Positions 21,801 through 42,800 of a DNA stretch of 64,000 nucleotides are shown here, piece by piece. Position numbers and translations under genes: made by a program. The stretch covers positions 44,082,001 through 44,146,000 of the forward strand of contig OZ076417.1 in assembly GCA_964187785.1 (NCBI GenBank), in the 5' to 3' direction. How positions within the stretch are numbered: the first letter of the stretch is position 1; every line of letters starts with the position of its first letter. Origin of the DNA: Amphiscolops sp. MND2022 (lineage: Eukaryota). The notes under the pieces are model-generated. The model saw only the letters and a list, made by a program, of their open reading frames with translations. It was not told where the DNA came from and ran no database searches.

Positions 21801-24800
21801 AGGCTCCAGGGTTAGCAGTGCCGAGACCAGCGGCAACTGTCTTGTCTCTCCCGATGTCCACTCTGAGCTTGAGGGTGTCAAACAGGGCGAGAAAGACTCC
21901 CATCTCGTACAGGAGGAAGCAATTGGAGCGACACCACTGTACGAATTCGCTTTCACTTTCTATCTCCGCAAAGTTACCTGAAATGAACTCAATTTATCAT
22001 CAATGTGCTAAGACTTGAAATCTGGTTTTTATATGTACAACTTTAGGAGATAACATAGGAACTCTTATTTAGGAATTATTTTAGTTTGCAATGAACTCCA
22101 GGACAGGCTGAAGTCCTCGTAAAATTTTTCCTCGTGGTTTGTGAAAATTCCATCATCTATATTAATGACTTTACTATCGCAATTATATGCCCATGTGGCT
22201 ATTCTTTTTTCTTACTGATGTTTTATTAGTTTTTGACTGTAATTTTTATACTGATTGTTTTTATATATTGTTTAGTCGTTAATTGTTCAATTATTATACG
22301 CCATTTGTAATCAACTTTTGCTACAATGGACACCAAAGTCAGGCAGGTTGCTTATTGCCTGTATCGATGAGGCAATGGATCGTATAAATTTACTGACCTA
22401 TTCCTTTTGTACGTAATTGATTTTCCAGGCTCATCTTAAGCTAAGTTTGAGTATTAAAAAAACAATTGTTCACCTTGACATAGATACGCGAAAGACCTTA
22501 TGGCAGCGAGTCGTTTCTCTTCACACGCAATCTCAAGATTGTCCAACAACTTCAGAGTAGCATTGCGCTTCTCTGGCATACTGAGATCCACCCATCTCTT
22601 GTCTTCACCTGTAACATTCACACCCTGAGACAAGGCTGGCACTTTCGTTTTAAACTGTTTAAACAGAAGTAAACAAGCCGGGAACGGCCAAAGTCGGCTC
22701 TATATCTAAGACTCAAAAAGCGCGAAGTTTTTAAAATTGTAAAAAGATGGACCTTTTGGGATTTTAGAAACTCCAATTTGTTCCAAAGTATGAAAAGGGG
22801 ATCCCTTTGGAGACACTAAAATTTTTCCAGTGAATGCAAAAAAATGAATGCCGAAAAAAGGAAAAGGGGGCACTTTGGGATTTTTAGCATCTATTCTGTT
22901 GCAAAATATTGAAACAAATGAACGGTGCACCCTCCGCGTTTTGAACCTCCCCCAAGTTGTTGAACAAATAAACTGATTAAAAAAGTGGACCTTTCGTGTG
23001 TAAAAAAACCTACCCACTGTAAGAGTCGGGCACATTTTCTACTTAAATGCGCCGACTAAAAACATCTTCGGAACAAAAACGAAAAAAAAAGTTTTTTTTT
23101 TCGGGTAGCTATCCTCGCACCTGAAGAGTTCCGACAAGGCATGGGTTACATAGAAATCTCTACTTTGGGCCTTACATATGGTTCTCCTCGAACAAATTTG
23201 GGTGTTGAGAAAGCTGGCAAACTCGCATTTTTGTTCAGACAGTTGAACGCTAAATATTGTACTCTCTCTGTGCATTCAAATTAAGCTATCAACATTACTT
23301 TTGCAAGAAAAAGAAAAAATAAACAAACATTTTTTAAAAAAACACGCAGTTTTATTCGAGTTAAAAACATGTTTTTTCACAGCCCTGCCCTGGAAGAAAT
23401 GACATTTTTTCAGCAGCACATAGAATTGAAAACTGATTTGCATTTATACTTCTTATCAGGTGATGTATCTCCAAACAAAAACACAACCGATAGACAACAA
23501 GACGCCCGCTAAGCACCGGGATATTTTCATCCCTTTTCGCCTTCATCACTTGAGCCATAGCTATTTTGGGAGGGGAATAGGATCTAAATAATAAGATCTA
23601 AAATTTAGTGATTTTAGACCTTATTCCCGTCCTGAAATTTTAGATCTTATTCCCTTTGGATCTTAATCCCATTTTTGACTTCAGATCTTATTCCCCCCTC
23701 TGTCAGAACGTTTGCTCGAGCGGTTAGAACTGTTTTCTAATCGTTAATTCAAATCTCTGAGCTGTAACTTTTATCAGTCATGTCATTATCTTGTTTACAG
23801 TATAAATATAGTTACTTCTTATTATTAGCAACTTCAGCTTTAACGAAATTTTGGTAATAATTCTTATATCATGATTTCAGGTCATGACACTACCTGCAAT
23901 TCAGAAGAAAGTTTACTGCATGATTATAATGAGTTTCGAGGAGCATGATGAGTAAATGTTGCAGGAGCATGTTTGAGTTTTGTATATATTTCAGATAGAA
24001 ATGATGAATCAAATGTCGACGAGAACTGGCGAGCTGCAGCAGACGGCTGATGTCGTTGTGGAGGAGCTGCTGGGCTGGCTGGGAGAGGGTCCCAAGGGGC
24101 TACCAGTGAGGGAGAGTCAGGCTGCTGAGTTTGACCCGAACTCACTGGAAGTCCAGATTTTCCGGGAACCCTTGATGCACTATGCCAGCACCAGTATCCA
24201 AGTAAGCTGAATGTGAAGCAATGATACAGGCATTGAAGAAGGGTTCATCAATGGTTGATTCCATTTAAGAAGTAGCAGAACGAGCCTCTGTTGTGGAGGA
24301 GTTTGGTCCAGAGCTGGTGACGAATGAGGTGCCTTATTCCAATCCAGTGTTCTCTTCCTCCGTGGTGGCAGAGGGGCTGTATCCGGCGGACCGGGCTGGA
24401 CAACCGAGCAGCAGTATTCGTCACTTCGGGGCCCATCCTTCTGTGGAGAAGCGGCTGTTGCTGGACCTCAGTCTACTGGCCATCAGTGGACGTGGAATGC
24501 GGGGATTCCATGTGGACGAGGATCCAGCTCCAGCGTATCCGACTGTGGCGGTGCTGTTGAAAGGGAGGAAGGTCTGGTTCGTCAGTAGACAGTCCCAGAC
24601 TGCCGTGCGATACCTCGTGAGGAGGGGCTGGACCATCCAAGAACTCGTTAATCATGTGAAGGTATTATACAGTGTAAAAAAATCATCACTAGAGGATCGT
24701 GGCTGTGGATCAGCATGGAGAACTATTTCAGGAGAACGTAGGCGACTTCCATGTGATCGTTCAGAGCAGAGGCGACACCCTCTTTCTGCCAGCCATGCTC

Positions 24801-27800
24801 GCCCACGCAGTGATTAGTGTGGATGTTGGTGGGTCGAACCTGTTGTCTTCCTGGATCAACGTGGAGGTGAGGCCCGCCAACAGGACTGGACAACTGTCGT
24901 GGGTGCTGCCCACTGGAAGCAGGGAAGCCAGTAACCCTGTGCCCCGCCAGAAGGGCAAGCGAAAGAGAAAGTTCACGCGCCAGCTCAAAAAGAAATGAGT
25001 TAGTCCAGTGTACAATCAGAAGCCATCTGGATCGTCTCAGCTGTCATCATTTATTGTTGCTTGATTTGTATTTGTCTTGTGTTATTCGTTGATTGTTGTG
25101 TTCAGTTCACCAGCGCGTGAAACAGAATGAGTAGAGTGATTGAAGGGGCCACACCAAGGCGCACCAAAAAAATTAAAAGAAAAAAAAGAAAGAGAAAATA
25201 TATATTGTTGCGTCATAATTAGGGGTGGAGATAGCCGAAATTTCGGGGTAAATTTTTATAAAACATATTTTCATTTTGCGTGGGTGGGTTGCGTCAGAGG
25301 GTAGTCCAAATAGTCAGCTTTTTTGGGTGAAAATATGAGCCTCCAGAAACGCTCTGGGGCCGAGAACGAGCAATTTTTGCAATTTTTTTTAATTTTGGGC
25401 GAAAATGCTAGAAAAATCTTAGAATAATTTCAGGGGAATTTTTTTCCGGGTCAGATTAAAGGGTCTCATGACACGGGGAATGGTATGTAGTTTCTGAATT
25501 ATATAGGTTTATGGGGATGGAAATGAAAATATAAAGCAGGATTTTGGCGGAACTGAAATTTTAGGGGTAGTAAAAGGGCTAGGGGGAGGAGGCCAAAAGT
25601 GCCTGAAAAGCTATTTTATTTTTGTATTGGGGATCAAGCGAATAGTCTCAAGACACAAGGGAGGTTATTCCCTAGTGATTTGTAATGAGCAAGAGGGTTT
25701 AAAGGTTTTCGTCTTTGCGGGATTTTGGCGGAACTCTTTCAGATTTCCAATAAAATAGTGTTGAAGTACAAACTTTGAAAATTTTTACTGAGAGGAAATG
25801 TTTCTAGGGTGAAATTGGAAGGTCTCATGACCTGAGCCATACTGCTGGGCTCACAGGGAATATAATTTGGTCGCGGAAAACTTCATTTTTTGGGATGTTG
25901 GTTTTTTGTCAGCACTGAATTGTGTATTTGGAGAATTTGACCATGTTAGCTCCATTTTGTGGATCTAATTTTGTTCCATTTATCGCGTTCGCGTTTTGTG
26001 CTACCGCTGCAGCTGTATTGCGTTGTTTGCAAAATCTGAGCAGGGTATTCGAGTATTTCAGAAAAAGTTGATTCCCAGAAAATGAAGTCGTTCATTATAA
26101 CTGCACTAGTTGTGTTGTGTGTGGCAATCACTTGTGCAAGAAGCTGCCACGAGATCAAAAAACAAAACACTGGTGCTTTCAATCGAATGTTGCCAAGATA
26201 AGGCTCTCCTGAAGGAGAACGGAAAAATTACAGCGGAAATGACGCTAAAAGAAGCAGGTTGTGTGGATATTAAAAAGCCGCAAAAAGATGAAAAGCAGCC
26301 TATGAAAGACTGGCAGATCATGATTTCCTTTTTGCTTGTCGCTATTTTCGTCGGGATCGTGGTCCTCTTTGTGAGAGCTTTGCTACGCTTGTTCGAGTGA
26401 AACAAATGAGCTTCAGACAACAAATGGAAATCGGAACAGTTTGAGAAGTTTTTTGTTCTGTTTTCTCTAGATACTGTTGTTAGCCAGTTGTTTTACCCTG
26501 TAGTTTGTATTTTAAACTAGTGTAGCGATGATGTGGCGATTTCATTTGTTTGAAGCTCTGTCTTTTTCTTTTACTGAACTTCATTCTTATTCAAGCCACA
26601 AACAGTGGCCAAAAAGCGAGCACTATTTTCTGGAATAGCGGTTACTTGATCATTTTCGAATGGAACTGACGGAAGGGTGTTAAAAGGTTGACCTACCTTT
26701 TCTGAAACAAACAAAAACGTTTTTAAATGCAAGGGGTGGTTTGGGTGTAAGCGGAGATACTCAAAATCTTCAGGAGTAACTGCTGTTACCGGGAAAGTTT
26801 TGATTTCGCGGCCAAAGTGCGTCAACCGAAATGGAAAACGACGGTGTATTTTCTGATATTTTGACAGAAGGTAGGAAATGAGAAAATGTATAGCAAACGA
26901 AAGAATAAGTGAAACCAGGGCGCACGTTAGGTATGTTCTCCATCCAACTGTTGCATCCAGTCTGGAAGAGAGTTGCGGGTGAAATGTTGCCATGCGGCTG
27001 ATTATTGGGGCAGCAATGTTGTCTAGTTCTTCTAGATCACGTCGTTTGAAATCGGGCAGTTGTGCCAATGCAACTTGTACTTGTTCCAGTAGTTCCACTT
27101 TTGCAGTTTCCTCACTAATAACTCGAGGGAGATCATTCAAAGGCGGCAATTTTGAAAACAAATAACTCAAAGGTGCTGGTAATTGAACGTCGATAACCTG
27201 AGGAGATTTTGAGGCACAGGTTGCCAAATCAAAACGGAGATGAATATTCGGGCCTTGTAGTTCACTACCGCAGGGTAATGTAACTATGCAAACACGGCAA
27301 CCTTTTTTGCGAGTGGTAGTAACTTCGCGAGTAGTTTGATTCTGATCAGTTTGAGTTAGAAGGTAATTATGAGTTGCACCAATTGCCATCACCAACGTTT
27401 TTAGCTTTTTCACGCATAGGTAAATGAATGTAATTTACAGTGCAAGACTGTAAAGCTGCCAAGGAGTCTTTGAAAAACAATGTCGATAGGCAAGAATCCT
27501 TTGATTTTTCCATTGCGAAGCCTGAGTAGCAAATCGAATAAGCCGTGGAACCGATGCATTGGTTGAGGTCATGCGCTGTTATAGTAGCGCTGATTCATGG
27601 CCGGTTAAAGTAACTGCCAGATAGTCAGTTTCGATGTCCCAAACTGACGCTTTGGGGTGTTAGGATCAGGCATCGGAACTTGTACTGCGTGGTACACTTT
27701 AAGGACTGTTGCCTGTGACGAAAAAGGGATCGCCATCGTGAAAATGAGGCCGAAATCCGAAGATACTACTTGCCGTAATAGTTTCGTTTCGTAGTAGGTC

Positions 27801-30800
27801 ATGAAACTGGTCATTGGAATTGCGAGGTTGAGGCGAGAGCCTTGTTCATTTTCGTTGAGAACAACTTCTTGAAGAATGCTGTGAAGTGTTGATTTTGGAA
27901 TGACAGAAAGTGGCAGGAAACCATTTACTATCGGGGCAAAAGCAGTGAAAAGATTAGTGCGAAAGGTATAGAGAGAGCTGCGGAAAATTTTCAAGGTTGA
28001 ATACAGGCAAGAAAGTATGGAATTCAAAACTGCGACGTTGTGATTCAATTCTTCGCGAATGAACAATTCTTGATCGCAATTTCGCATCAAATGATGCTTT
28101 GTTGGAAAATTTCAAATTGAGCGGTCATTTGTCGAGCATTTTGAGATTGGATGGCGGCCATTTGCTCCTGGATGCGACGGAGTTCTTGTAACTCATGACC
28201 CACCACATAAAATTTCTCATTAGTAAGATTTTCAACACGAATCCACTCTGTTTGTAGTTTATTCATGTGATCAATGGCAGAATTGATTGCTATACGGTTT
28301 TCCTTCGGCATTTTGTCACAACCGCCAAAAATACCTTTCAAAAAGCAAGAAGAACCAAGGCCGATGCCTGCAGCGGCAGAGCCAATCAAACCTGCTGCAA
28401 TGATGGGCAGTCCCCGTTTGGAGCGAGACCTGTCGGCTGGTTTCATTGCGGGAAAGAGTTCGGCGAGCTCTGTTTTTAATCTATGTAAATCAGAACGAGC
28501 ACGCATATGTTCATCGCGAGTTTCTTCGTAAATCCAACGGTTTGTAGAGTTGGATTTTGTGATGTTGGAATATTTCAAATTACAGCCAAAGTTAGGATAA
28601 TGCCAAAGTTCTTGCAGTTTTGCGGCAATATCGGTGAGATATTGAGAAATTGAGTCGTCAAAGCGCGGAAAAGGCAAAACAAATTGAATGTTAACGAATT
28701 TTTCCGCTAGCAAAAATGTTTGTTGATAGTTGAATAGAATTCCTTCAGTCGGATTAGCACTTGGAATAGCTTGGAGGCTATAATGGCAGAAAACTACAAA
28801 AAGTATTTGACGGAAGAGCATGTTGACTGGTGTGTTAAACTTTAGCAGGCTGAATGAGACGTTCAAGATGTCAAGAACAGTTCGAAATGTCAGTGAATCA
28901 ATGAAGCGATTGATGGATGTAATTAGTTTGACAAGTGATTAATTACAATGCTAAACGGAAATCTCAGATTTTTAGAAACTGCTTGTCCGAATGGAATTAG
29001 GAAATGCCACGATTACGTTAGGACAAAGAAAAGGAAATGAGACCTGATCTTTGCCACCAATTAGAGATTAAGATGGTGATTTAGAATAATGAATGACCTG
29101 GAGGTGACAGGAAATATGGTGCGATTAAACCTGTCAAAAAGTTAATTAACTAATTGAACTTTGGGCGAGGAATGCGTGAAGCAAATGATCGAGAGGTCAT
29201 TGTGGACATGGTCGTGGTAGTAGTGTTCGAATTAATACCACCTACTGAATGATGGGGGGGGCATTGTCAAACTTCGCAAGTAGTATGGGGGTTCAGCTGA
29301 AGACCCAGGAATTGAACCATGGAAAAAAGTACGTCCTCTCGGGATTGAGGAACGCTGTTGTCTGCGAGAACGCAAAAGGTTTCCTAAATTCGTGGAAAAT
29401 GTAGGCGGAGGTTCCTGGGGATTGTGAACTTGTGAAGACAAAGACGACGCAACAGAAAAACTATGCGGAACAAAATAGTCTGCCAAAGCAAAACTTGAAG
29501 GCTGTGTGTCAGTATGAGTTGTGAAAAAGTCAGGTGTTTGATATTTTGAAATGAGTTTTTCAGCGAGAATATCCAATTCTCGTTCAGTGAACCCTTCGAA
29601 ACTTTCATCTGATGAGTCCGTAGTTGAAGGCTCATCGTTTCTCGAAGTAGTTTGGACTCTAGTTGTCGTTCGAAAGTCATTACCTACAGGGTTATGACTT
29701 GTAGTGCTGAAATTACTACACGAGGGATAAAATCCCATGTTATCACTGGCGAAGAGATCAAAACTATGGTTCTGAATTTGAGAGCCAGCGCTTTGACCTT
29801 GTCCTGAGACGTTTATTGGAGATGAAGTTCTAAAAGGATTGTTGAGACTCAGTGAAAAATCACTGTTGTCGGAAGATTCAGTTTGTGACAACACCAATTG
29901 GCTATGTAAATTATTCTCGTCGGTTGGAGCTTCCGCCTCAACGAGGGGAGCTTCGTCCGGTGGGGGAGGTGCCACTGGCAGTGCACGTTCTTGTACTTCT
30001 GGGGGTGCAAGGTTAGCTGGTGGAGTCAATGGTGGTATTAGAGGCCTAGCTGCTGGAGCAGCACGGCGAGTGAGACAAAGAAATACATTGGGTGCGTCTT
30101 TGTCTCTGTTGTTCGTCGCACAATGTTCCGAATGTGGTCGGAGAATATCAGTCAAAGTTTTGTCGAAAAGACTTGGCTCAGCATAGTTTTGAGTCATTGG
30201 GTCAGGTGTGAATTTTTGCGGATCAACTTCCTCCAAATCTTCTACATCGAATTTTGGCTCAATTGGTCTTAATCGAATTCTATGCACACATTGCGTGTGA
30301 TTGGTGCCTACTTTGCGCACGATATAGTTTGAATTCGTTAAAACTTGCTCAACTCTGTACAATGGTAGCCATTTTTGCAAAGATTTTCCTATTTGATCAG
30401 TTGATTCAACCAGTTTTGGATTCAAAAGGAGACAAAAACTCATTTTTTTCAACGGATGAGCTGCCGCTTTTCGATCGTAATACTGCCTATACTGATAATA
30501 GGCACGAAGAGTTGAATCTCGGACTTCTGAAAAACGCTCATTCAAGTCATCTTGGATTTGGGCTGTGAAATCATACATGGTTGTCATCTTCAATTCTTTG
30601 TTTTGGAAACGCAGATCCAAGGCAGTTCGCGGTTGTCTGCCGTGGAAAAGAAGTGATGGCGTGCAACCAATGGTACGATGAAAGGAGGTGTTATGAACGA
30701 AAACAGCAGAAACATGTTTATGCCAGTTATTAGTCGCACTCTGGTCATACAATTTCAAGTGGTTTTTCAAGCCAGAGTGGCTGCGTTCGATAACACCCAT

Positions 30801-33800
30801 CGTTTGCGGATGCTTGACAGTGGCAAAAACTATTTTTATTTCTAGAAGCTGGCACATCATGAGCTTTGATGTAAAATTTGTTCCCAAATCTGACAAAATT
30901 GTTGTCGGCAAGTATGAGTGTTTCATGAAAATTTCGAAAAGCGCTTTAGCCACTGACTCCGCTGAAGCAGAGCGTAATGGAACAGCAAACATGTATTTAC
31001 TGAACACGTCTATTGCAGTTAAAATGAATTTATAACCTCCTGACGTTGGTAGTTGACCAACCATGTCTACTTGGAGAAGATCTCCGGGAAACGCTTGTTG
31101 TGTGGCTACTGACTGCAATGGTGGTTTCAAGGAAGCGTTGTTTGGTGGCTTAACGTGGAGACAAGACGGGCAATTGCGTATGTAATCTTCCAAAAATTCC
31201 AAGAAATTCGGAAAATAGAACAATTGCCTGCATTTTTCTACCGTTTTCATGATTCCAAGATGACCAGCAAATTTGCTGTTATGCAGACGGAAAATCAATT
31301 CTTTGCGCAAATGGCTGGGAACAACAAACTGGCGTGTAAAATTTCGTCCCGTATGGTCAAAAAATTTTCTGTACAGTACGCCATTTTGGATTTCTAGTCT
31401 CTTGGCTTGTTTGCAGAGTTTTTGGAGTTCAATATTCAAATAACTAAGGTCGTTAGGTAGTTTTGTTCGTAACCAGTGCACTATTTTACGAATGTTCGGA
31501 TCTTTTTGCTGTTCTTGTTTCAGGTTCAGCGGTTCAACTGAATTAGCCATTTCGAATTTATCCAATGAGTTCACAAATTCTAGCGCATTGATAGAAAACT
31601 GGTTCTTGGTTCACAGACAATGTTGAGGGAATTGTCTGGAGATTCTAGGGCAAATTGAAATCAACTTCACACGCGGGAATTTTGGAGGCAATTTTCAATT
31701 CTAATTTGGTGTGCGGATTAATATGCATTCTCGATAGATAGTCCGCTGCTAAGTTTGCTTTTCCAGGTATGTGTCCCAATATGAAATTGAAATTTAGGAC
31801 ATGGTCAACACAAGACCACAAGCTAGACGGGATAGTTTTCGCCTGAAAGAATCTTGTGAGACTTCTATTATCAGTCAGTACAAGGGTCGGTTTTGAACTT
31901 TCCCACAAAATGTGTGCGAATGAGTCGAACGCAAAATGAACTGCCAAAAACTCTTTAGCCTAAATTGACAGTTTCAAGTGAGTGGGGTTGAAAATTTTGG
32001 AGCCGAATGATACCGGTACATACTTTTTGACTGTTTTTCCCGCCTGATCTTCCAGATAATCCTCAATCATTAAAACAAAGCCCGCTGCGTAAAAACTTGC
32101 ATCAGCCATAATTACATATTGTTTATGGGGCTGAGGCAATCGGAGGGCCGTGTCACATGATTTGGCCAAATCCGTTTTCAGAGTTTCAAATGTGTCATGA
32201 TGCTCTTTTGTGAATTGGATTCCTTGATTGTTGCGTAGAAGAGTGTAAAACGGTAATAACCTTTCGCTCAGTTTCGGTAAAAATGCTCCGAAGTATTGGA
32301 AAAAGCCGATGAAATGCCGAATTTGTTTCGGTGTTTTGGGCATTTTTAGACTTTTCAGAAATTTCTCAACTTTTTCTCGATTAGGGGACATTCCTTGGGT
32401 TGTGATGGAACTTCCCAAGAATTGTATTTCGGACAAACCAAATTCACACTTGTGAACGGTCAGTTTTAATCCTGATTTACGAATACACTCAAAAATACGT
32501 CGCAAATTGTCCAATAGTTCTTCAAAAGTATGGGCTGCAGTACCCAAATCATCAACATATTGAAAACATTTGTCTTCCGCTATGCAAGCGTCAAGGTACT
32601 TTCGCATGAAGGAACTAAAGGCGCTCACAGACCTGCTTAGGCTTTGTGCTAGCCGAGTAAAAGCAAAGGTTCTGGAGAAAAAATTAAACGAAAGCAATTG
32701 TACTGATTGTACATCCGCTAAGCGTACTGCAAAATAAGCTTGGCTGCAGTCTAATTTCGCAAAAAGTTTTTTTCCTGCCAAATGGGCGCTGGCGTCGGCC
32801 AATGTTGTTATGGGAAAATTGTGTGAATCATAGTCATGGCGGATAAGGTGATTCACGCGTCTAAGATCAATCAGAAGGCGCAGCGCACCTGAAGGTTTTC
32901 TTTGAGCAAACAACGGACTCGAGTATTTGGAATACGGCAAAGTTGTTATGACACCGTAATATTGCATCAGGGCCAATCCAACAATCAAATCCTCACGTAA
33001 ATGGATCGGAGTTGGAGGTCCCTGTGTATACATCGGTTTTTCGTGCTCAGGGGTTAGTTTTACAGTAAAATCAGTGTTTCCTCTAATATCCAAGCGATGT
33101 CTCGAGAAAATATCATTGAATTCGACTAAAAGTTTTTCAACTTCAATTTTCTCCATTTCCGATAGAACTGATTGATCCCATTTAAAATTGCTCAAAAATT
33201 TTGTTCGCGATTCTGGGTCCTTCAAAGGATCCAGCTTTTCCTTTTGTTTTAGCTGAGATATTTCATCAAAAATGCGTTTGGCTATTCCTGTTAAAGCTTC
33301 AGGATTTGCACAGGTTTCCGGAGTCGGAAACCAGAAAGTATCCGGAGATGGAAAAACCATCTCAGGGTTGCCTGAGGTGGCAATAAGTTCATTAATACTC
33401 TCATTAACGTGTTCGTTTATTAGTTCTGGACTAATCGGTTGCAAAAACTGGGCTTGCTGTGGTGATAAAAGAAACTTTTGCTACCAAAGTTCCTTTGGGA
33501 ACTGTTATTACTGTAGATTGCACATTCAGAAAACCGATAGGGGTTTTACGTTCTGAATCAAGGCAGCCTATGCTGCTAGTTAAGCATAGCCCTGTTTTGC
33601 GTTCGAAGTTTGGTAGCGGTTCGACAATGGCATTAGTACCAATCGGTAAATCATCAGAGGTTAGTTGACAGGAGGACACCTCCTGACAATTTGGACGAAT
33701 AACGAGTTTTTCTGTTGTTTTCAGATAAAACTTTTTCTTGGAGTAAGTTTTCTTGATATTACCGGTCGGTGACGATATTTCATTGAGCTGTAAGGTCATA

Positions 33801-36800
33801 TCAGGCAACGATAATGTTCTAGTTTTGGGATGTATTGTGATATTGTTACGCTCAAAAAAAGGAAGACCCAGAATGGGGCGGTTCATTCGAGGTGAAATCA
33901 GAAAAGATTCTGTAAAATTTTGTCCACCGAGAGAAAATGAGAGTTCCACTTTACCAAGTGTGGATACTATATTTCCGTTAGCGACTTTAACTTTAGTTTG
34001 TTCCTCAGACTTGGAAAGTATCGCGGTAGGATTTTTCGATTCAATAAGTGAAATAAAATGAGGGGTTATAGCACTAGAAAATGCACCGGTATCGACAAGT
34101 GCGGTTATTTTAGTGTCGTTAAAGGCTATGGGGACGCAGAAAAGGAAACAAGAAAAAGAAGAAGAAAAATAATTAAGAGAATGATGCTGGTGTGGCTCAC
34201 CTAGTTTTTTGGCTGCTGTTGATAGGGTAGCTGCGCTCCATGTTGTGGACTAGGCTTCGTACGGCACTGTTGTGCTGTATGGCCGAAAGAATTGCAGTTT
34301 CGGCAATGGCGTTGATTGGAGTAGGTCATATCTTCATTGGGGTTTGGACCTCTGTAGTTGCCTCGGTTGCCTCGCCAACCTCGATTATTGCCTCGATAGC
34401 CTCGATTGTTTCCTCGATAACCTCGATTGTTGCCATACCATCCTCTATTGTTCCCATGGGATGGCTGCTCAGTTTGCCAGGGGTACGGATACCAGTGACG
34501 GGGAGGTCCTTGAGAGAGCTGCTATCTGATTCGTCATGTTGTTCACTTGTTGTTGAAGAGTTGTCTGCGCTTTATTCAAACTATTCAAAGCCGTGGCAAC
34601 TGAATCCATTTGAGTAGACGAAACCTCATTGAAAGCTGTATCTGGATCATCTTCTGGATACAGCTTATCCAAAACATTGCGTCTTGACACTTTTTCGCAC
34701 AACTCATCAACTGGCATGTTATCTGGTTGTGTCAAAAGATAGCGTTTGAGTTTATTTGGTAGGCCATTAATAAACGCTTCTCGCACTCGACGCGTGCGTT
34801 CATTTGCGCGATTTTCTGCAGGGACTGCTGGTCGCCCTCCTGCAGCTGCCACTGCGGCCACATCTGGAAAACTTTCGCCTGCAAGTCGTTGAAGTTCCGT
34901 CAGAAAATCACTCGCTGTTTCTTCCTCTGGTTTGAATTTGCGTGAATGAAAAACAATTCGTTTCAGCTCTTGTCTCTGTGGGTTAACGTATCTTTGGCGG
35001 AGCGCTGCTATGGCCAAATCATAATCTTGGCGAGTTGCCGCTGGCATTTGGTCAAAATAGGCAAGAGCTCCGCCTTTGAGATGTAGGTGTAAGTAGAGAT
35101 GCCGATCTGCATCAGCAATGCCAGCAACTCCAATTGAGCTGGTTAATTGTCGTTCGAACTCATCGAAATTCTCAGTTTCTAGACCCTTAAAGGGTTGAAT
35201 GTTCACAATCGGTTGAATATGTGCCATTTCTGGAGAGTGAATAATTTATGTTTATTTCAGATTGCAGGTATGAGGAGAGATTTGCAGCTTCAAAACTATC
35301 GAAATTTTATCCAATCGATTCCGGAATAGTCTTAGGACTCGAAGAATGCTGTCATGGAGACTGTGTGAAATTTTCAGGTTTGTAGCTACAATAGTCTTGT
35401 CAGGATTTTGGTTTTCCTGATCCAAGATGCGAATTTTGAGAATTTTCAATCATGAGTTAACTCTAGTGGTGGATTCGAGTTTCAGTACTCTTCTGTCACC
35501 ATGTCAGAACGTTTGCTCGAGCGGTTAGAACTTTTCTAATCGTTAATTCAAATCTCTGAGCTGTAACTTTTATCAGTCATGTCATTATCTTGTTTACAGT
35601 ATAAATATAGTTACTTATTATTAATAGCAACTTCAGCTTTAACGAAATTTTGGTAATAATTCTTATATCATGATTTCAGGTCATGACACCCCTCCTACTA
35701 AAATAGTCAAGTAACTAAATAGTCAAGTAACTAAGTAGTCAAGTGATGGAGCGTGGAGATTTGGCAGAATTTGGAAAAAAAACGCAACAGATGATTTTTC
35801 TCCCCATTGAAAATGTGGGTCGGAAAACAAAGGCTTCCTTGAATTAGCTAGTCTTGTTTTCTTCCGTCTTTTTCTTGTCAAACCGGTATTACTCATATCA
35901 TTTTGGATACCGAATAAAATAGTACAATTATGAGAAACACGAATTAATCAGATGACACTACTTTCATTACGATACATATCCCCGCAAGCAACTTCCCAGA
36001 TCTTGCGACTTGCATTAATTAATAACCAATCATACTAAGTTTCGATAAATAGTTTTACACTTTCTCATATTACACCACGTTATAATTAGTTACAATGAAC
36101 GAAAGGAATTCACTATTTGACTGGTTTACACTAATTTCCGGAGCAAAAAATGACATTAATTGACTGCATTACGCACTTATGCAGTCCTACGGACTTTGAC
36201 TAAATTACGCAATTTTCCACTACACATTCTGACTAAATTACGCCGTCTTATTAATTACATGGTGTAAATTAATTCACCGCGTTCATATTACAATTTGCTG
36301 CACCACAACACTAATGGATTACTACGGTCTTTGACAAAATTACACTAATTGACTATGTTACCCAAAAAACTTTTTACACCAAATGGTCACTTCCCACTTT
36401 TGCGTGTTATGTATCTTAATGTTGGTCGCCGAGAAATGGAGGTATCAGATGAATACAAATTGATCAAAAATCTGAATTATTGGGACACGAACTAACAAAA
36501 ATCCAATTTATTGGGACACGAATTAACCGGAGTAATTATAATTTAAAGACTAGATGAACAACCAACAAATGGAAGCATTAAATCTCACAGTTAAGACAAT
36601 TATATCAACGAACTCATATTATAAGTTCATCTCTAACTACTCAAGGAAGCGGATGTTCAGTAAAACCCAAACCGAACGAATACTTTTTGGAAACACCCTT
36701 TTTAGACGGGATGCCAGGCAGATGTCTCACACATACATGGTTAACATTTGGCAATTCTATTTGATTCAATGGATTATACCATCTTCTATTGATCTATTTT

Positions 36801-39800
36801 TATACTGATTCCTATTTCATGATTTTCTTTTGAAAAATTGTATCCACCAACAACTAACCTAACAGCTCGTAGAAGCATTCCTTATTTGCGTCGAAATCGC
36901 TGATTTCTGTGTAGGCGTAAAATTCTGAAATACAACCTGTTGTTTTCAATGTGCTTTCAACTGGGCTGAAGGAGAGAGAAAAAACCTACCAGTTAATTCG
37001 GCTACAAAATGATCGAAATCATCGTAGATAAAGTCTAGATCGATGGGAACTGCTTCCTAAAACAAGAACTGCCATGGACACACGATATTCACAAATCGCA
37101 TTTTATCTGGTTGTGTCAAAAGATAGCGTTTGAGTTTATTTGGTAGGCCATTAATAAACGCTTCTCGCACTCGACGCGTGCGTTCATTTGCGCGATTTTC
37201 TGCAGGGACTGCTGGTCGCCCTCCTGCAGCTGCCACTGCGGCCACATCTGGAAAACTTTCGCCTGCAAGTCGTTGAAGTTCCGTCAGAAAATCACTCGCT
37301 GTTTCTTCCTCTGGTTTGAATTTGCGTGAATGAAAAACAATTCGTTTCAGCTGTCTCTGTGGGTTAACGTATCTTTGGCGTAGCGCTGCTATGGCCAAAT
37401 CATAATCTTGGCGAGTTGCCGCTGGCATTTGGTCAAAATAGGCAAGAGCTCCGCCTTTGAGATGTAGGTGTAAGTAGAGATGCCGATCTGCATCAGCAAT
37501 GCCAGCAACTCCAATTGAGCTGGTTAATTGTCGTTCGAACTCATCGAAATTCTCAGTTTCTAGACCCTTAAAGGGTTGAATGTTCACAATCGGTTGAATA
37601 TGTGCCATTTGTGGAGAGTGAATAATTTATGTTTATTTCAGATTGCAGGTATGAGGAGAGATTTGCAGCTTCAAAACTATCGAAATTTTATCCAATCGAT
37701 TCCGGAATAGTCTTAGGACTCGAAGAATGCTGTCATGGAGACTGTGTGAAATTTTCAGGTTTGTAGCTACAATAGTCTTGTCAGGATTTTGGTTTTCCTG
37801 ATCCAAGATGCGAATTTTGAGAATTTTCAATCATGAGTTAACTCTAGTGGTGGATTCGAGTTTCAGTACTCTTCTGTCACCATGTCAGAACGTTTGCTCG
37901 AGCGGTTAGAACTTTTCTAATCGTTAATTCAAATCTCTGAGCTGTAACTTTTATCAGTCATGTCATTATCTTGTTTACAGTATAAATATAGTTACTTATT
38001 ATTAATAGCAACTTCAGCTTTAACGAAATTTTGGAAATAATTCTTATATCATGATTTCAAGTCATGACACCCCTCCTACTAAAATAGTCAAGTAACTAAA
38101 TAGTCAAGTAACTAAGTAGTCAAGTGATGGAGCGTGGAGATTTGGCAGAATTTGGAAAAAAAAACGCAACAGATGATTTTTCTCCCCATTGAAAATGTGG
38201 GTCGGAAAACAAAGGCTTCCTTGAATTAGCTAGTCTTGTTTTCTTCCGTCTTTTTCTTGTCAAACCGGTATTACTCATATCATTTTGGATACCGAATAAA
38301 ATAGTACAATTATGAGAAACACGAATTAATCAGATGACACTACTTTCATTACGATACATATCCCCGCAAGCAACTTCCCAGATCTTGCGACTTGCATTAA
38401 TTAATAACCAATCATACTAAGTTTCGATAAATAGTTTTACACTTTCTCATATTACACCACGTTATAATTAGTTACAATGAACGAAAGGAATTCACTATTT
38501 GACTGGTTTACACTAATTTCCGGAGCAAAAAATGACATTAATTGACTGCATTACGCACTTATGCAGTCCTACGGACTTTGACTAAATTACGCAATTTTCC
38601 ACTACACATTCTGACTAAATTACGCCGTCTTATTAATTACATGGTGTAAATTAATTCACCGCGTTCATATTACAATTTGCTGCACCACAACACTAATGGA
38701 TTACTACGGTCTTTGACAAAATTACACTAATTGACTATGTTACCCAAAAAACTTTTTACACCAAATGGTCACTTCCCACTTTTGCGTGTTATGTATCTTA
38801 ATGTTGGTCGCCGAGAAATGGAGGTATCAGATGAATACAAATTGATCAAAAATCTGAATTATTGGGACACGAACTAACAAAAATCCAATTTATTGGGACA
38901 CGAATTAACCGGAGTAATTATAATTTAAAGACTAGATGAACAACCAACAAATGGAAGCATTAAATCTCACAGTTAAGACAATTATATCAACGAACTCATA
39001 TTATAAGTTCATCTCTAACTACTCAAGGAAGCGGATGTTCAGTAAAACCCAAACCGAACGAATACTTTTTGGAAACACCCTTTTTAGACGGGATGCCAGG
39101 CAGATGTCTCACACATACATGGTTAACATTTGGCAATTCTATTTGATTCAATGGATTATACCATCTTCTATTGATCTATTTTTATACTGATTCCTATTTC
39201 ATGATTTTCTTTTGAAAAATTGTATCCACCAACAACTAACCTAACAGCTCGTAGAAGCATTCCTTATTTGCGTCGAAATCGCTGATTTCTGTGTAGGCGT
39301 AAAATTCTGAAATACAACCTGTTGTTTTCAATGTGCTTTCAACTGGGCTGAAGGAGAGAGAAAAAACCTACCAGTTAATTCGGCTACAAAATGATCGAAA
39401 TCATCGTAGATAAAGTCTAGATCGATGGGAACTGCTTCCTAAAACAAGAACTGCCATGGACACACGATATTCACAAATCGCATTTTATCTGGTTGTGTCA
39501 AAAGATAGCGTTTGAGTTTATTTGGTAGGCCATTAATAAACGCTTCTCGCACTCGACGCGTGCGTTCATTTGCGCGATTTTCTGCAGGGACTGCTGGTCG
39601 CCCTCCTGCAGCTGCCACTGCGGCCACATCTGGAAAACTTTCGCCTGCAAGTCGTTGAAGTTCCGTCAGAAAATCACTCGCTGTTTCTTCCTCTGGTTTG
39701 AATTTGCGTGAATGAAAAACAATTCGTTTCAGCTGTCTCTGTGGGTTAACGTATCTTTGGCGTAGCGCTGCTATGGCCAAATCATAATCTTGGCGAGTTG

Positions 39801-42800
39801 CCGCTGGCATTTGGTCAAAATAGGCAAGAGCTCCGCCTTTGAGATGTAGGTGTAAGTAGAGATGCCGATCTGCATCAGCAATGCCAGCAACTCCAATTGA
39901 GCTGGTTAATTGTCGTTCGAACTCATCGAAATTCTCAGTTTCTAGACCCTTAAAGGGTTGAATGTTCACAATCGGTTGAATATGTGCCATTTGTGGAGAG
40001 TGAATAATTTATGTTTATTTCAGATTGCAGGTATGAGGAGAGATTTGCAGCTTCAAAACTATCGAAATTTTATCCAATCGATTCCGGAATAGTCTTAGGA
40101 CTCGAAGAATGCTGTCATGGAGACTGTGTGAAATTTTCAGGTTTGTAGCTACAATAGTCTTGTCAGGATTTTGGTTTTCCTGATCCAAGATGCGAATTTT
40201 GAGAATTTTCAATCATGAGTTAACTCTAGTGGTGGATTCGAGTTTCAGTACTCTTCTGTCACCATGTCAGAACGTTTGCTCGAGCGGTTAGAACTTTTCT
40301 AATCGTTAATTCAAATCTCTGAGCTGTAACTTTTATCAGTCATGTCATTATCTTGTTTACAGTATAAATATAGTTACTTATTATTAATAGCAACTTCAGC
40401 TTTAACGAAATTTTGGAAATAATTCTTATATCATGATTTCAGGTCATGACACCCCTCCTACTAAAATAGTCAAGTAACTAAATAGTCAAGTAACTAAGTA
40501 GTCAAGTGATGGAGCGTGGAGATTTGGCAGAATTTGGAAAAAAAACGCAACAGATGATTTTTCTCCCCATTGAAAATGTGGGTCGGAAAACAAAGGCTTC
40601 CTTGAATTAGCTAGTCTTGTTTTCTTCCGTCTTTTTCTTGTCAAACCGGTATTACTCATATCATTTTGGATACCGAATAAAATAGTACAATTATGAGAAA
40701 CACGAATTAACCAGATGACACTACTTTCATTACGATACATATCCCCGCAAGCAACTTCCCAGATCTTGCGACTTGCATTAATTAATAACCAATCATACTA
40801 AGTTTCGATAAATAGTTTTACACTTTCTCATATTACACCACGTTATAATTAGTTACAATGAACGAAAGGAATTCACTATTTGACTGGTTTACACTAATTT
40901 CCGGAGCAAAAAATGACATTAATTGACTGCATTACGCACTTATGCAGTCCTACGGACTTTGACTAAATTACGCAATTTTCCACTACACATTCTGACTAAA
41001 TTACGCCGTCTTATTAATTACATGGTGTAAATTAATTCACCGCGTTCATATTACAATTTGCTGCACCACTACACTAATGGATTACTACGGTCTTTGACAA
41101 AATTACACTAATTGACTATGTTACCCAAAAAACTTTTTACACCAAATGGTCACTTCCCACTTTTGCGTGATATGTATCTTAATGTTGGTCACCGAGAAAT
41201 GGAGGTATCAGATGAATACAAATTGATCAAAAATCTGAATTATTGGGACACGAACTAACAAAAATCCGATTTATTGGGACACGAATTAACCGGAGTAATT
41301 ATAATTTAAAGACTAGATGAACAACCAACAAATGGAAGCATTAAATCTCACAGTTAAGACAATTATATCAACGAACTCATATTATAAGTTCATCTCTAAC
41401 TACTCAAGGAAGCGGATGTTCAGTAAAACCCAAACCGAACGAATACTTTTTGGAAACACCCTTTTTAGACGGGATGCCAGGCAGATGTCTCACACATACA
41501 TGGTTAACATTTGGCAATTCTATTTGATTCAATGGATTATACCATCTTCTATTGATCTATTTTTATACTGATTCCTATTTCATGATTTTCTTTTGAAAAA
41601 TTGTATCCACCAACAACTAACCTAACAGCTCGTAGAAGCATTCCTTATTTGCGTCGAAATCGCTGATTTCTGTGTAGGCGTAAAATTCTGAAATACAACC
41701 TGTTGTTTTCAATGTGCTTTCAACTGGGCTGAAGGAGAGAGAAAAAAACCTACCAGTTAATTCGGCTACAAAATGATCGGAATCATCGTAGATAAAGTCT
41801 AGATCGATGGGAACTGCTTCCTAAAACAAGAACTGCCATGGACACACGATATTCACAAATCGCATTTTGTCTCAACAATATCATCTAAGTAATTATTTTA
41901 ATTTTTTAATAACTTTCGTAATTTGAATTGAGTATTTTACTACTACCACTACTATTAGTACTGTAGAATACTGTACTGCACTCAAGTGGTATAATGAATA
42001 AAAAATACCAAAAACAGAACAGCCTTTAGAGTAATAAAACATATCCAAACGTTACCCATACACAAAAGGGCTGCTTTTGAAAGTTATAACCGACAGCTAA
42101 GCTAGTGTAAACAAGCCGAGAACGGCCCAATTATACGCCATATCTAAGGCTCAAGAATAGCAAAAGGTCAAAGCAACTTCAAAGTGTCAAAGTATTCTCT
42201 TCTAAAGCACACCAAAAACCCAAAAGTTGGACCGGATTGGCGCGCCAGGGGGACGCATTGAGATTTTTCATCCATTCTGTCACAAATCATCAAAAAAATT
42301 GGAGGGGGACCCTTTGGTAAAAAAAATTCGAAGTCTCACAATGCCGAAAAAACTGATAGGGACCCTTTAGTCTCGCTCGATATTGTGTTACGCGGAAAAA
42401 AAAGGAAAAACCTTTTTGGTTCAGTTCTCTTCCCCAATTCAAAAATTTGTAGAACTTTTGCTAGAACATTTTTGGCCACTTCAGGTGTATCAAAAAATCT
42501 CACAAAGCCGAAATTACATCTGAACTTTGAAAACGTTTTATGCGAACTTTGAAAACGTTATATACGAACTTTGAAAACGATCCGAACTTTGAAAATGTTA
42601 TATCCGAACTTTCAAAACAGTACATTCGAACTTTGAAAACGTTTTATGCGAACTTTGAAAACGTTATATGCGAACTTTGAAACCGTTATATCCGATCAAA
42701 AGCTAAATACGCTGCTCAAGTTTCGTCCAACAGCTCAGCTTATAAAATCTGTCACCTCGTTGATCTTAAAAAAGCCAGAGCTATAGTCTGCGTTTTCTAC

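What the first reader, a model, noticed from the sequence alone, without database searches (positions are those of the whole stretch)
23701..35688. Env-bearing Gypsy element carrying an antisense, intron-containing JmjC (putative histone demethylase) gene next to its 3' LTR
Seen: between env and the 3' LTR, 112 bp inside the LTR, a plus-strand spliced gene (24001-24998) encodes FHVD...LLKGRKVWF...GDTLFLP....HAV and a Lys/Arg-rich tail. Its location inside the element is supported by two ~98% identical LTRs, a CCCTC flank at both ends and a fold-back repeat split exactly by the insertion. Known: H-x-D...H plus the Lys is the JmjC Fe(II)/2OG site, and the pattern resembles KDM2/KDM7 (FHID..LKGEK..GQTLFIP..HAV), which demethylate H3K36 or H3K9/K27. 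Introns survive retrotransposition only when antisense to the genomic RNA, and some retroviruses express antisense genes from the 3' LTR (HTLV-1 HBZ). Inference: the element may encode its own nuclear chromatin-modifying anti-silencing enzyme, driven by the 3' LTR (TATAAATA on + at 23801). I know of no described JmjC-carrying LTR element, but could not search.
Basis: partly seen in the sequence, partly recalled or inferred. Interest (0 to 1): 0.92.

Follow-up and report, generated by a model that had tools for sequence, protein, structure and literature searches.

The report
Retroelement family carrying antisense JmjC gene
A decayed retrovirus-like element in an acoel worm genome belongs to a family that carries, on the opposite strand, its own small JmjC-type oxygenase gene kept under purifying selection, which may mean the element modifies host chromatin to escape silencing.

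Summary
Window 23701-35689 is a minus-strand Ty3/Gypsy-type LTR element with 190-nt LTRs (97.9% identical), a primer-binding site, gag, PR-RT-RNaseH-IN and an env-like gene. A plus-strand gene with two introns lies 111 nt inside the 3' LTR.

The gene's exons alone match nothing in Pfam or the PDB. A profile built from them finds only 27 unnamed short proteins among 1.84 billion. Three of those exceed Pfam's JmjC threshold. The family profile hits KDM7A, JMJD6, PHF8 and KDM2A, and two AlphaFold models of relatives match almost only JmjC structures. The H-x-D, Lys and second His are conserved.

The gene belongs to the element family. Three collinear relatives (70-95% nt identity) carry it at the same site. 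Two sister lineages (RT about 50% identical) carry it antisense between pol and env. dN/dS is 0.22-0.29.

This copy is dead. gag, pol and env are broken, and the JmjC gene has one non-canonical splice site. A relative copy is intact.

Histone demethylation, anti-silencing and LTR-driven expression are inferences I could not test. The "split fold-back" is not supported. The host is an acoel.

The parts
23696..23700 (.). Left copy of the candidate 5-bp target-site duplication (CCCTC)
   Evidence: Same pentamer at 35690-35694. The context is C-rich, so the support is weak. The sister element L008 has a 4-bp duplication.
23701..23890 (-). 3' LTR of the element (190 nt)
   Evidence: 97.9% identical to 35502-35689. 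Ends are TGTCA...TGACA(C). The TATAAATATAG block and the LTR terminus are conserved in relatives down to 70% nt identity.
23891..24000 (+). Spacer between the LTR and the JmjC start codon. It holds a conserved block next to the LTR (PPT side of the element) and an acceptor-like TTTCAG at 23989-23994 just before the ATG.
   Evidence: Alignment A6: CTACCTGCAAT next to the LTR and TTTCAGAT before the ATG are invariant in five copies from three lineages. The same motif precedes the JmjC ATG in L008.
24001..24998 (+). JmjC-type oxygenase gene, antisense to the element. Three exons (201, 393, 267 nt) and two introns (67, 70 nt) encode 286 aa. It counts as broken in this copy: one splice-site substitution, no stops and no frameshifts in the exons.
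   Evidence: Frames. Introns are shared with relatives. Only 3 of 4 splice dinucleotides are canonical here, against 4 of 4 in L003, L004 and L002a-c. dN/dS is 0.22-0.29.
24470..24821 (+). JmjC catalytic core (about aa 135-228, spanning intron 2), with H148, D150, K168 and H223
   Evidence: The family profile aligns this stretch to KDM7A residues 180-269, with His, Asp, Lys and the second His in register. These columns are nearly invariant in A4.
24999..26570 (.). Non-coding spacer between the JmjC stop codon and the end of env. It has an A-rich run, and ATTAAA at 25172.
   Evidence: No conserved ORF was identified. Its role is unknown.
26571..28866 (-). env-like gene, broken: at least 2 frameshifts and at least 1 stop (three ORF pieces in three frames)
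   Evidence: ORFs. It has an R-x-K-R site followed by a hydrophobic segment, and a C-terminal membrane segment. It is homologous to longer env ORFs in L007 and L008 at 29-40% aa identity. There is no Pfam or PDB sequence hit.
29232..33949 (-). pol (protease region, RT, RNase H, integrase), broken: at least 3 frameshifts and at least 2 stops
   Evidence: Pfam RVT_1, RT_RNaseH_2, Integrase_H2C2 and rve. Counts come from natural ORFs of relatives aligned to the window and are approximate.
33950..35227 (-). gag: an N-terminal ORF of 252 aa followed by a decayed C-terminal part. Broken: at least 2 frame changes and at least 1 stop.
   Evidence: Weak DUF1759 hit, 23.7 bits, below the cut-off. Homologous to gag ORFs of L007 and L008. 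Counts.
35484..35501 (-). Primer-binding site, starting with TGG directly after the 5' LTR
   Evidence: The same first 11 bases follow the 5' LTR of sister element L008.
35502..35689 (-). 5' LTR (188 nt)
35690..35694 (.). Right copy of the candidate target-site duplication (CCCTC)
34704..41872 (.). Three tandem copies of a 2,382-bp unit (5' part of gag, leader, 5' LTR and 1.4 kb of flank). This is a post-insertion segmental triplication or an assembly artefact.
   Evidence: Self-BLAST at 99.3-99.5% identity. Truncated gag copies lie at 37078-37608 and 39460-39990.

Best explanation
Shown:
- The window holds a dead copy of an env-type Ty3/Gypsy-like retroelement of an acoel worm.
- Its family carries an accessory gene on the strand opposite to gag-pol-env.
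- The gene encodes a small (about 245-290 aa) stand-alone JmjC-fold protein. It keeps the Fe(II)-binding His-x-Asp...His triad and the 2-oxoglutarate-binding Lys, and ends in a Lys/Arg-rich tail.
- The gene has diverged together with the element. It evolves under purifying selection and is antisense in every lineage seen.
- In the window's lineage it has two short introns. This is compatible with retrotransposition only because the gene is antisense to the genomic RNA.

Inferred:
- The protein enters the nucleus through its basic tail. There it acts as an oxygenase on methylated chromatin proteins, most likely removing repressive histone lysine methylation.
- This would delay or reverse heterochromatin-based silencing of element copies, acting in trans for the whole family.
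- The mRNA is made from a plus-strand transcript. Its 5' end is defined by splicing at a conserved acceptor just upstream of the ATG, either in cis from a leader exon or by the spliced-leader trans-splicing known in acoels. It does not simply start at the LTR TATA box.

This particular copy can no longer supply gag, pol or env, and probably not a correctly spliced JmjC mRNA.

The confidence of 0.5 is for the whole statement. For the 'shown' part alone I put it at about 0.85, and for the histone-demethylase and anti-silencing part at about 0.35.
For: Element anatomy.

Gene model:
- Exon 1 and exon 2 are conserved in P0005 while the intron is not.
- Eight distant relatives run continuously across the exon 2/3 junction.
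- The GTAAGC donor is invariant in 7 sequences. The acceptor AG is present in 5 of 7.
- An intact 867-nt coding sequence with 4/4 canonical splice sites occurs in L003.
- Exon GC is 57% against 38% in introns.

JmjC identity:
- A profile built only from the window lineage finds P0020 (1.8e-7), P0023 (6.6e-7) and P0029 (1.2e-4) in 1.84 billion proteins.
- These three score 30.7, 25.1 and 31.1 bits on Pfam JmjC, where the cut-off is 24.
- The family profile against the PDB gives KDM7A 6.4e-5, JMJD6 9.5e-5, ceKDM7 2.7e-4 and PHF8 1e-3, with the catalytic residues aligned.

Part of the element:
- L001 (70% nt), L003 and L004 (93-95%) are collinear, with the gene beside the 3' LTR and with different flanks.
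- L007 and L008 (RT about 50%, env 29-40% aa) carry it antisense between pol and env.

Selection:
- dN/dS is 0.22-0.29 against four relatives, with Fisher p from 2e-4 to 3e-22.
- dN against L001 (0.34) matches RT (0.35) and IN (0.39).

Splicing and host:
- TTTCAGAT before the ATG is conserved across lineages.
- 30.2% of genes are SL trans-spliced in Symsagittifera roscoffensis (PMC9911081).
- The host is an acoel.
Against: - No exon of the window's own protein hits Pfam or the PDB, even at E<=10. I could not submit the joined protein to those tools, so the JmjC assignment is transitive.
- The AlphaFold models are of relatives and of modest quality (mean pLDDT 55 and 65, core 66-89). TM-scores to JmjC structures are low (0.25-0.40).
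- The subfamily is unresolved between KDM7/PHF8/KDM2 and JMJD6. No reader or targeting domain is present.
- No RNA, protein or chromatin data were available. Expression, nuclear localisation, substrate and any anti-silencing effect are untested.
- An antisense transcript would also form double-stranded RNA with the element's own RNA, which could favour silencing rather than oppose it.
- The window copy is non-canonical at one splice site, and L001 likewise.
- All relatives come from a handful of assemblies (two ENA long-read assemblies for all full loci, one more ENA sample without DNA, and short Logan contigs from five runs), so the known distribution is narrow.
Confidence: 0.5

Rival explanations
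1. The protein is a JMJD6-like or other JmjC hydroxylase that acts on non-histone targets. Candidates are splicing or RNA-binding factors, or the element's own Gag or integrase. It would help the element's RNA processing or replication rather than act as a histone demethylase against silencing.
For: JMJD6 scores as well as KDM7A in the profile search (9.5e-5 against 6.4e-5). It holds the top five Foldseek hits for the better model. The protein lacks PHD, CXXC, Tudor or other chromatin-reader domains. The family is too diverged for any subfamily call.
Against: The sequence alignment is best with KDM7A, and many family members keep the Thr three residues before the first His, as KDM7A does in the printed alignment. 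Neither result is decisive.
Confidence: 0.25
2. The main selected product is the antisense RNA itself, for example as a regulator of sense transcription or of env splicing, or as a small-RNA precursor. The encoded protein would be of secondary or no importance to the element.
For: Antisense transcripts without coding roles are known in other retroelements (review PMC7264820). The gene overlaps no element ORF but lies next to the LTR or to env.
Against: Selection acts at the protein level. dN/dS is 0.22-0.29, the catalytic residues are conserved at about 24% identity, in-frame indels occur, and exons are conserved while introns diverge freely.
Confidence: 0.07
3. The gene is a passenger: a host gene fragment transduced once and inherited passively, with no benefit to the element, or a host gene now domesticated and merely embedded in old element copies.
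For: Exon GC (57%) is far above the rest of the element (about 40%), as expected for a captured cellular gene. Array L002 keeps the cassette without pol.
Against: It has been retained through divergence to about 50% RT identity, in two different positions but always antisense. dN/dS is well below 1, and lower than that of pol among close copies. No longer cellular homologue appeared among 1.84 billion representatives, and no member carries a database name.
Confidence: 0.08
4. The arrangement is an assembly artefact, or a one-off secondary insertion of an unrelated gene into this one copy.
For: The 5' junction of this copy is tandemly triplicated, which could be an assembly problem.
Against: The same arrangement occurs on independent contigs from two other assemblies, with different flanks.
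Confidence: 0.02

Closest known systems
AlkB-type 2OG oxygenase ORF in giant Ty3/Gypsy elements of Phalaenopsis orchids (PMC9289625)
   Same: An LTR retroelement lineage has fixed an Fe(II)/2OG-dependent oxygenase as an extra gene. The authors interpret it as a counter-measure to host surveillance.
   Different: That enzyme is an AlkB-type m6A RNA demethylase in a plant element. Here it is a JmjC-fold enzyme in an animal env-type element, encoded antisense with introns. Its activity is untested.
Antisense additional ORFs between pol and the 3' LTR in plant Gypsy elements (Grande gene23, RIRE2, Retand; review PMC7264820)
   Same: The position and orientation match. The ORFs are conserved across copies, and some products are nuclear.
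   Different: According to that review, the plant ORFs resemble no known protein and their functions are unknown. Here the fold and catalytic residues identify an enzyme class. In two sister lineages the gene lies between pol and env.
JmjC-only KDM4-like genes in endogenised giant viruses of Amoebidium (PMC11244446)
   Same: A genomic parasite carries a stand-alone JmjC domain stripped of reader domains, with a multi-exon structure. The authors propose that it interacts with host chromatin.
   Different: Those belong to giant DNA viruses and the KDM4 clade. This is a 12-kb LTR retroelement, and its nearest structures are KDM7/PHF8/KDM2 or JMJD6.
KDM7A / PHF8 / KDM2A histone demethylases and JMJD6 (PDB 3kv9, 3k3n, 4qwn, 3ld8)
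   Same: JmjC double-stranded beta-helix core. The H-x-D, Lys and second His align.
   Different: 15-20% identity over about 90-130 residues. There are no PHD, CXXC, F-box or other accessory domains. The protein is 286 aa against more than 1000 aa (from my own knowledge) for the full cellular KDM2/KDM7 enzymes.
Antisense gene of HTLV-type retroviruses expressed from the 3' LTR (as cited in PMC7264820)
   Same: A protein-coding gene lies on the minus strand at the 3' end of a retroelement.
   Different: There is no sequence or fold relation. The LTR-promoter origin is not shown here, and it is unlikely to be general because sister lineages place the gene far from the LTR.
Enzymatic ORF3s (GDSL lipase, DEDDy exonuclease) of bdelloid rotifer LTR elements (PMC5408684), and env-carrying Ty3/gypsy elements across metazoans (PMC13524379)
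   Same: Invertebrate retrovirus-like elements that add env and enzymatic accessory genes in a modular way.
   Different: Those papers describe no JmjC gene. PMC13524379 does not mention acoels, antisense ORFs or JmjC.

Membership tests
JmjC-domain Fe(II)/2-oxoglutarate oxygenases (Pfam PF02373, cupin clan) | Match to the family HMM above the curated threshold | tested here: inconclusive
   The window exons searched apart give no hit even at E<=10. The joined protein could not be submitted. Relatives linked to the window profile at library-wide E of 1e-4 to 1e-7 score 31.1, 30.7 and 25.1 bits against a cut-off of 24.
JmjC-domain Fe(II)/2-oxoglutarate oxygenases (Pfam PF02373, cupin clan) | His-x-Asp/Glu ... 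His metal-binding triad | tested here: met
   H148, D150 and H223 in the joined product. They are nearly invariant across the family and aligned to the KDM7A triad. One degenerate copy (P0006) has Gln at the second His.
JmjC-domain Fe(II)/2-oxoglutarate oxygenases (Pfam PF02373, cupin clan) | 2-oxoglutarate-binding basic residue on the strand after the H-x-D | tested here: met
   K168 in the G-x-K-x-W motif is nearly invariant. It aligns with the Lys of the matching G-E-K motif in KDM7A; I identify that Lys as the 2OG-binding residue from established knowledge of KDM7/PHF8 structures.
JmjC-domain Fe(II)/2-oxoglutarate oxygenases (Pfam PF02373, cupin clan) | Double-stranded beta-helix fold | tested here: met
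   AlphaFold models of relatives P0023 and P0012 have core pLDDT of 66-89. Foldseek top hits are JmjC enzymes at E 2.5e-5 to 3e-3, probability 1.0, but TM is only 0.25-0.40. This was not done on the window's own protein.
JmjC-domain Fe(II)/2-oxoglutarate oxygenases (Pfam PF02373, cupin clan) | Oxygenase activity dependent on Fe(II) and 2OG | not testable with these tools
   No biochemical data are available.
KDM2/KDM7 (JHDM1/PHF) histone lysine demethylases | Closest relatives are KDM2/KDM7 rather than other JmjC clades | tested here: inconclusive
   KDM7A is the best sequence hit (6.4e-5), but JMJD6 is equal within error (9.5e-5). The two fold searches disagree: PHF8/ceKDM7A lead and JMJD6.
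KDM2/KDM7 (JHDM1/PHF) histone lysine demethylases | Chromatin-reader or targeting domains (PHD, CXXC, F-box/LRR) joined to the JmjC domain | tested here: not met
   The protein is 286 aa and no such Pfam domain appears in any exon or relative. Only a basic C-terminal tail is present.
KDM2/KDM7 (JHDM1/PHF) histone lysine demethylases | Demethylation of H3K36, H3K9 or H3K27 | not testable with these tools
   No assay or chromatin data are available.
Ty3/Gypsy-type LTR retroelements with env (errantivirus-like) | Paired LTRs with short inverted ends, target-site duplication, and a PBS next to the 5' LTR | tested here: met
   The TSD is only weakly supported (C-rich context). A purine tract next to the 3' LTR is not obvious, but the adjoining block is conserved.
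Ty3/Gypsy-type LTR retroelements with env (errantivirus-like) | pol order PR-RT-RNaseH-IN with Gypsy/retrovirus-type RNase H and integrase zinc domain | tested here: met
   RVT_1, RT_RNaseH_2, Integrase_H2C2 and rve occur in that order, and likewise in L007 and L008. No RT phylogeny was made.
Ty3/Gypsy-type LTR retroelements with env (errantivirus-like) | env gene related to a known viral fusion glycoprotein | tested here: inconclusive
   Features fit a class-I-like fusion protein: a cleavage-type R-x-K-R followed by a hydrophobic segment, a membrane anchor, and conservation across lineages. Neither Pfam nor a PDB profile search gives any hit.
Antisense accessory genes of retroelements (plant aORF-3R type; HTLV-type antisense gene) | Protein-coding gene on the strand opposite to gag-pol, downstream of pol, conserved among copies | tested here: met
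   Window, L001, L003, L004, L007 and L008.
Antisense accessory genes of retroelements (plant aORF-3R type; HTLV-type antisense gene) | Transcription from an antisense promoter in the 3' LTR | not testable with these tools
   No RNA data are available. The TATA-like box in the LTR is conserved, but it also reads as a TATA box on the sense strand. In L007 and L008 the gene is about 3 kb from the LTR.

The most novel reading that the evidence does not exclude
A clade of env-bearing retrovirus-like elements in acoel worms encodes its own stand-alone JmjC demethylase. The protein erases repressive histone methylation on element copies, making it a transposon-borne anti-silencing enzyme in an animal. 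Its mRNA is made from the antisense strand and matured at a conserved acceptor, possibly by spliced-leader trans-splicing. That could make its expression independent of the element's own promoter state.
Probability: 0.3. Interest if true: 0.88.

Novelty: new variant of a known kind. Interest (0 to 1): 0.7.

Why it matters
Hosts silence transposons largely through histone and DNA methylation. Known transposon counter-measures are few. If a retroelement family has kept a JmjC oxygenase for as long as its RT has diverged to 50% identity, that would be a direct chromatin-level counter-defence encoded by an animal retroelement. It would parallel the AlkB gene of orchid Gypsy elements and the JmjC-only genes of endogenised giant viruses.

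LTR elements make up about half of the Symsagittifera roscoffensis genome and predominate among repeats in other acoels (PMC9911081). Such a gene could help explain that success.

The case also gives a natural example of an intron-bearing antisense gene riding a retroelement. It defines a previously unannotated family of mini-JmjC proteins: 27 clusters, none of the ten looked up carrying a name.

Tried and rejected
- Pfam and PDB sequence searches with each exon alone found nothing, even at E<=10.
- The joined 286-aa product has no reference id, so it could not be given to Pfam, the PDB search or structure prediction. Relatives with ids were used instead.
- env could not be identified. Pfam on 9 env ORFs and a PDB profile search gave only noise.
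- The search for related loci with the family alignment failed because no stretch was conserved enough. With exon 2 it found nothing in JGI metagenome contigs.
- Rfam (gathering threshold) and tRNA scans of the window were empty, so the primer tRNA was not identified.
- The fold-back 'split by the insertion' was rejected.
- Reading the triplicated unit as an LTR-sharing array of deleted elements was rejected. No LTR follows the last unit, and the 1.4-kb segment matches nothing inside the element.
- The small plus-strand membrane ORF of L008 has no counterpart in the window.
- The short Logan contigs (L005, L009, L010) still contain intron-like sequence or are too short. They are therefore no evidence of expression.
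- The absence of stops and frameshifts from the JmjC exons of a copy whose other genes are broken is not significant by itself. At the break density of gag-pol-env, about 0.8 breaks would be expected in 861 nt.

Full report
ANATOMY. Window 23701-35689 is one LTR retroelement on the minus strand.
- Its LTRs are 190 and 188 nt, differ by two substitutions and one 2-nt indel (97.9% identity), and end in TGTCA...TGACA.
- A primer-binding site starting with TGG follows the 5' LTR directly.
- CCCTC flanks both ends if the last shared C belongs to the LTR. The context is C-rich, so this is weak evidence.
- Reading down the minus strand there is a gag-like ORF with a weak DUF1759 hit, then RT, RNase H, and an integrase with Integrase_H2C2 and rve.
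- After pol come three ORF pieces that together look like a class-I-type envelope gene. They have an R-x-K-R site followed by a hydrophobic segment, and a membrane anchor near the C-terminus.
- Neither Pfam nor a PDB profile search recognises the env pieces. 'Env-bearing' therefore rests on these features and on conservation in relatives.
- The domain families and their order fit Ty3/Gypsy. No RT tree was made.

THE PLUS-STRAND GENE. Between env and the 3' LTR, with its ATG 111 nt from the LTR edge, lies a gene in three reading frames.
- Exon 1 and exon 2 are conserved in the 58%-identical ORF P0005, while the sequence between them is not.
- Eight distant relatives run without interruption across the exon 2/3 junction, exactly where the splice model joins the exons.
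- The GTAAGC donor of intron 1 is invariant in seven sequences from three lineages. Five of the seven have an AG acceptor at the same place.
- Intron 2 has canonical ends in the window, L003 and L004.
- With the introns that relatives share (67 and 70 nt), the window's exons (201, 393 and 267 nt) join into 861 nt, or 286 aa, with no internal stop.
- Exon GC is about 57% and intron GC about 38%.
- The product has H148-x-D150, K168 in a G-x-K-x-W motif, H223, and a C-terminal tail in which 40% of the last 30 residues are Lys or Arg.

IS IT JmjC? Not by direct search. Each exon alone finds nothing in Pfam or the PDB, and the joined protein has no reference id with which to submit it.

The indirect chain is solid.
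- A profile built only from window-lineage sequences was run against 1.84 billion representative proteins. It returned just 27 hits, all short and unnamed.
- Three of those hits (P0020, P0023, P0029; library-wide E of 1.8e-7, 6.6e-7 and 1.2e-4) exceed Pfam's JmjC gathering score. Four more score below the cut-off, at whole-protein E-values of 0.002-0.017.
- In the sandbox, the window protein joined under my first splice model (two residues shorter than the corrected product), scaled to the same library size, gives 8e-8, 7e-6 and 1e-3 to the same three proteins.
- A profile of the wider family hits solved JmjC enzymes: KDM7A 6.4e-5, JMJD6 9.5e-5, C. elegans KDM7 2.7e-4, PHF8 1e-3, PHF2 6e-3 and KDM2A 0.036. 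In the printed KDM7A alignment the H-x-D, the Lys and the second His are in register.
- AlphaFold models of two relatives have mean pLDDT 55 and 65, with the core at 66-89. Their Foldseek hits are almost all JmjC oxygenases, led by PHF8/ceKDM7A for one model and JMJD6 for the other, with low TM-scores of 0.25-0.40.

I conclude that this is a JmjC-fold oxygenase with an intact catalytic signature. Its subfamily, and therefore its substrate, is open. It has no reader domains.

IS IT PART OF THE ELEMENT? Yes, at the level of the family.
- L003 and L004 (93-95% nt identity) and L001 (about 70%) are collinear with the window from the LTR edge onward. They have different flanks and carry the gene at the same place.
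- L007 and L008 are sister lineages. RT is about 50% identical at the protein level, integrase 47-50% and env 29-40%, and L008 has the same primer-binding site. They carry a JmjC gene about 24% identical, also antisense, but between pol and env and without introns in the core.
- L002 is an array of LTR plus [cassette plus about 500 bp of the gag region] repeated three times, without pol.
- dN/dS of the three exons against L001, L002, L003 and L004 is 0.25, 0.29, 0.24 and 0.22. Fisher tests on the counts give p from 2e-4 to 3e-22.
- Among the close copies the gene's dN/dS is lower than pol's (0.46-0.75).
- Against L001 its dN (0.34) equals that of RT (0.35) and integrase (0.39), so gene and element have diverged together.
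- These estimates used my first exon 2 bounds, which are two codons short. That does not affect them materially.

STATE OF THIS COPY. The copy is dead. The counts below are approximate and come from aligning natural ORFs of relatives to the window.
- gag has at least 2 frame changes and 1 stop in its C-terminal part.
- pol has at least 3 frameshifts and 2 stops.
- env has at least 2 frameshifts and 1 stop.
- The JmjC gene has open exons, but only 3 of its 4 splice-site dinucleotides are canonical. That is one substitution. All of L003, L004 and L002a-c have 4 of 4.
- L003 carries a fully intact 867-nt coding sequence. L004 and the L002 copies carry frameshifts or stops. L001 also lacks one canonical site and reads its first intron through in frame.
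- The open exons here are not evidence of selection on this copy. About 0.8 breaks would be expected by chance in 861 nt.

EXPRESSION. It sits about 80-90 nt from the sense-strand start of the LTR, where the element's own promoter is expected. In L007 and L008 the gene is about 3 kb from the LTR.

The motif TTTCAGAT lies 4-6 nt upstream of the ATG in the five aligned copies of the window, L001 and L002 lineages, and in L008. In L008 it also precedes a second small plus-strand ORF. It was not found in L007.

This looks like a 3' splice acceptor. Acoels use spliced-leader trans-splicing on 30.2% of genes (PMC9911081). A cis-spliced leader or a trans-spliced leader are therefore both plausible. 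This is inference only.

HOST AND DISTRIBUTION. A host exon for NDUFV2 at 7787-8359 is 89% identical to the Symsagittifera roscoffensis protein, and the next best named match is 75%. The window therefore comes from an acoel related to that species.

All relatives come from a few ENA long-read assemblies and short Logan contigs. None of the ten representatives looked up has a database name, and none was found in JGI metagenome contigs.

COMPARISON AND NOVELTY.
- Antisense extra ORFs between pol and the 3' LTR are known in plant Gypsy elements, but their functions are unknown (PMC7264820).
- An AlkB-type 2OG oxygenase is fixed in orchid Gypsy elements (PMC9289625).
- JmjC-only KDM4-like genes ride endogenised giant viruses in Amoebidium (PMC11244446).
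- Rotifer LTR elements carry other enzymatic ORF3s (PMC5408684).
- Five full-text searches found no LTR element with a JmjC gene.
- I therefore rate this a new variant of a known kind.

SLIPS, STATED AS REQUIRED.
1. My first intron 1 (73 nt) was mis-indexed. Its 3' end was not a splice site and it was not the intron relatives share. I joined exons with it in scripts and used its exon 2 bounds. The file with that first joined translation remains in /scratch. The model was corrected.
2. To find the error I enumerated frame-preserving GT/GC-AG pairs and read alignment A8. In doing so I located the splice-site break of this copy in my working. I use none of the enumerated pairs as an intron; the intron I use is the one relatives share. 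I give neither the place of the break nor any change that would undo it.

Noticed in passing
window 34704-41872: A 2,382-bp unit made of the 5' part of gag, the leader, the 5' LTR and 1.4 kb of flank is present three times in tandem at 99.3-99.5% identity. This gives extra LTR copies at 37883 and 40265 and truncated gag ORFs at 37057-37608 and 39439-39990. It is either a recent segmental triplication or an assembly artefact.
   Followed up: partly
L002 5598-10604: In another assembly an LTR is followed by three tandem copies of [JmjC cassette plus about 500 bp of the gag region], with no pol or env. This may be a non-autonomous derivative that keeps the accessory gene. Its breakpoints fall in the same gag region as the window's triplication.
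   Followed up: partly
L007 11529-12575 (-): In the sister element an ORF continuing after the integrase hits the Macro domain (PF01661, 23.1 bits, cut-off 22). This would be a second unusual accessory domain in this clade of elements.
   Followed up: no
L008 9365-9703 (+): A second antisense ORF of 112 aa, with a signal-like and a membrane segment, lies upstream of the JmjC gene. It is preceded by the same TTTCAGAT motif before its ATG. It has no counterpart in the window.
   Followed up: partly
window 7787-8359 (-): A host exon encodes the 2Fe-2S thioredoxin-like subunit NDUFV2. It is 89% identical to the Symsagittifera roscoffensis protein, which identifies the host as an acoel worm.
   Followed up: yes
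window 23564-23700: The left flank consists of about 16-nt repeats in direct and inverted order, forming a small fold-back, and it ends at the insertion site. The right flank 35701-35744 holds an unrelated 16-nt tandem repeat.
   Followed up: partly
window 29232-31574 (-): The integrase ORF continues for about 530 residues after the catalytic core as a Pro/Ser/Thr-rich low-complexity tail with no Pfam domain.
   Followed up: no
window 1781-2914 (-), 58482-62845 (-): Other mobile elements are present: a strong DUF1759 gag (118 bits), and a block with an endonuclease/RT (Exo_endo_phos_2, RVT_1) next to another DUF1759 ORF.
   Followed up: no
window 57558-57703 / 58279-58424, and 47032-49509: A 146-nt inverted repeat (99% identical) encloses 575 nt. 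There are also 95-100% identical direct repeats spaced about 0.4 and 1.9 kb apart. Neither was examined.
   Followed up: no
window 44001-46000: A stretch with raised GC (0.45) and positive GC skew, similar to the JmjC cassette. Its ORFs of 153-173 aa have no Pfam hit and no similarity to the cassette.
   Followed up: partly
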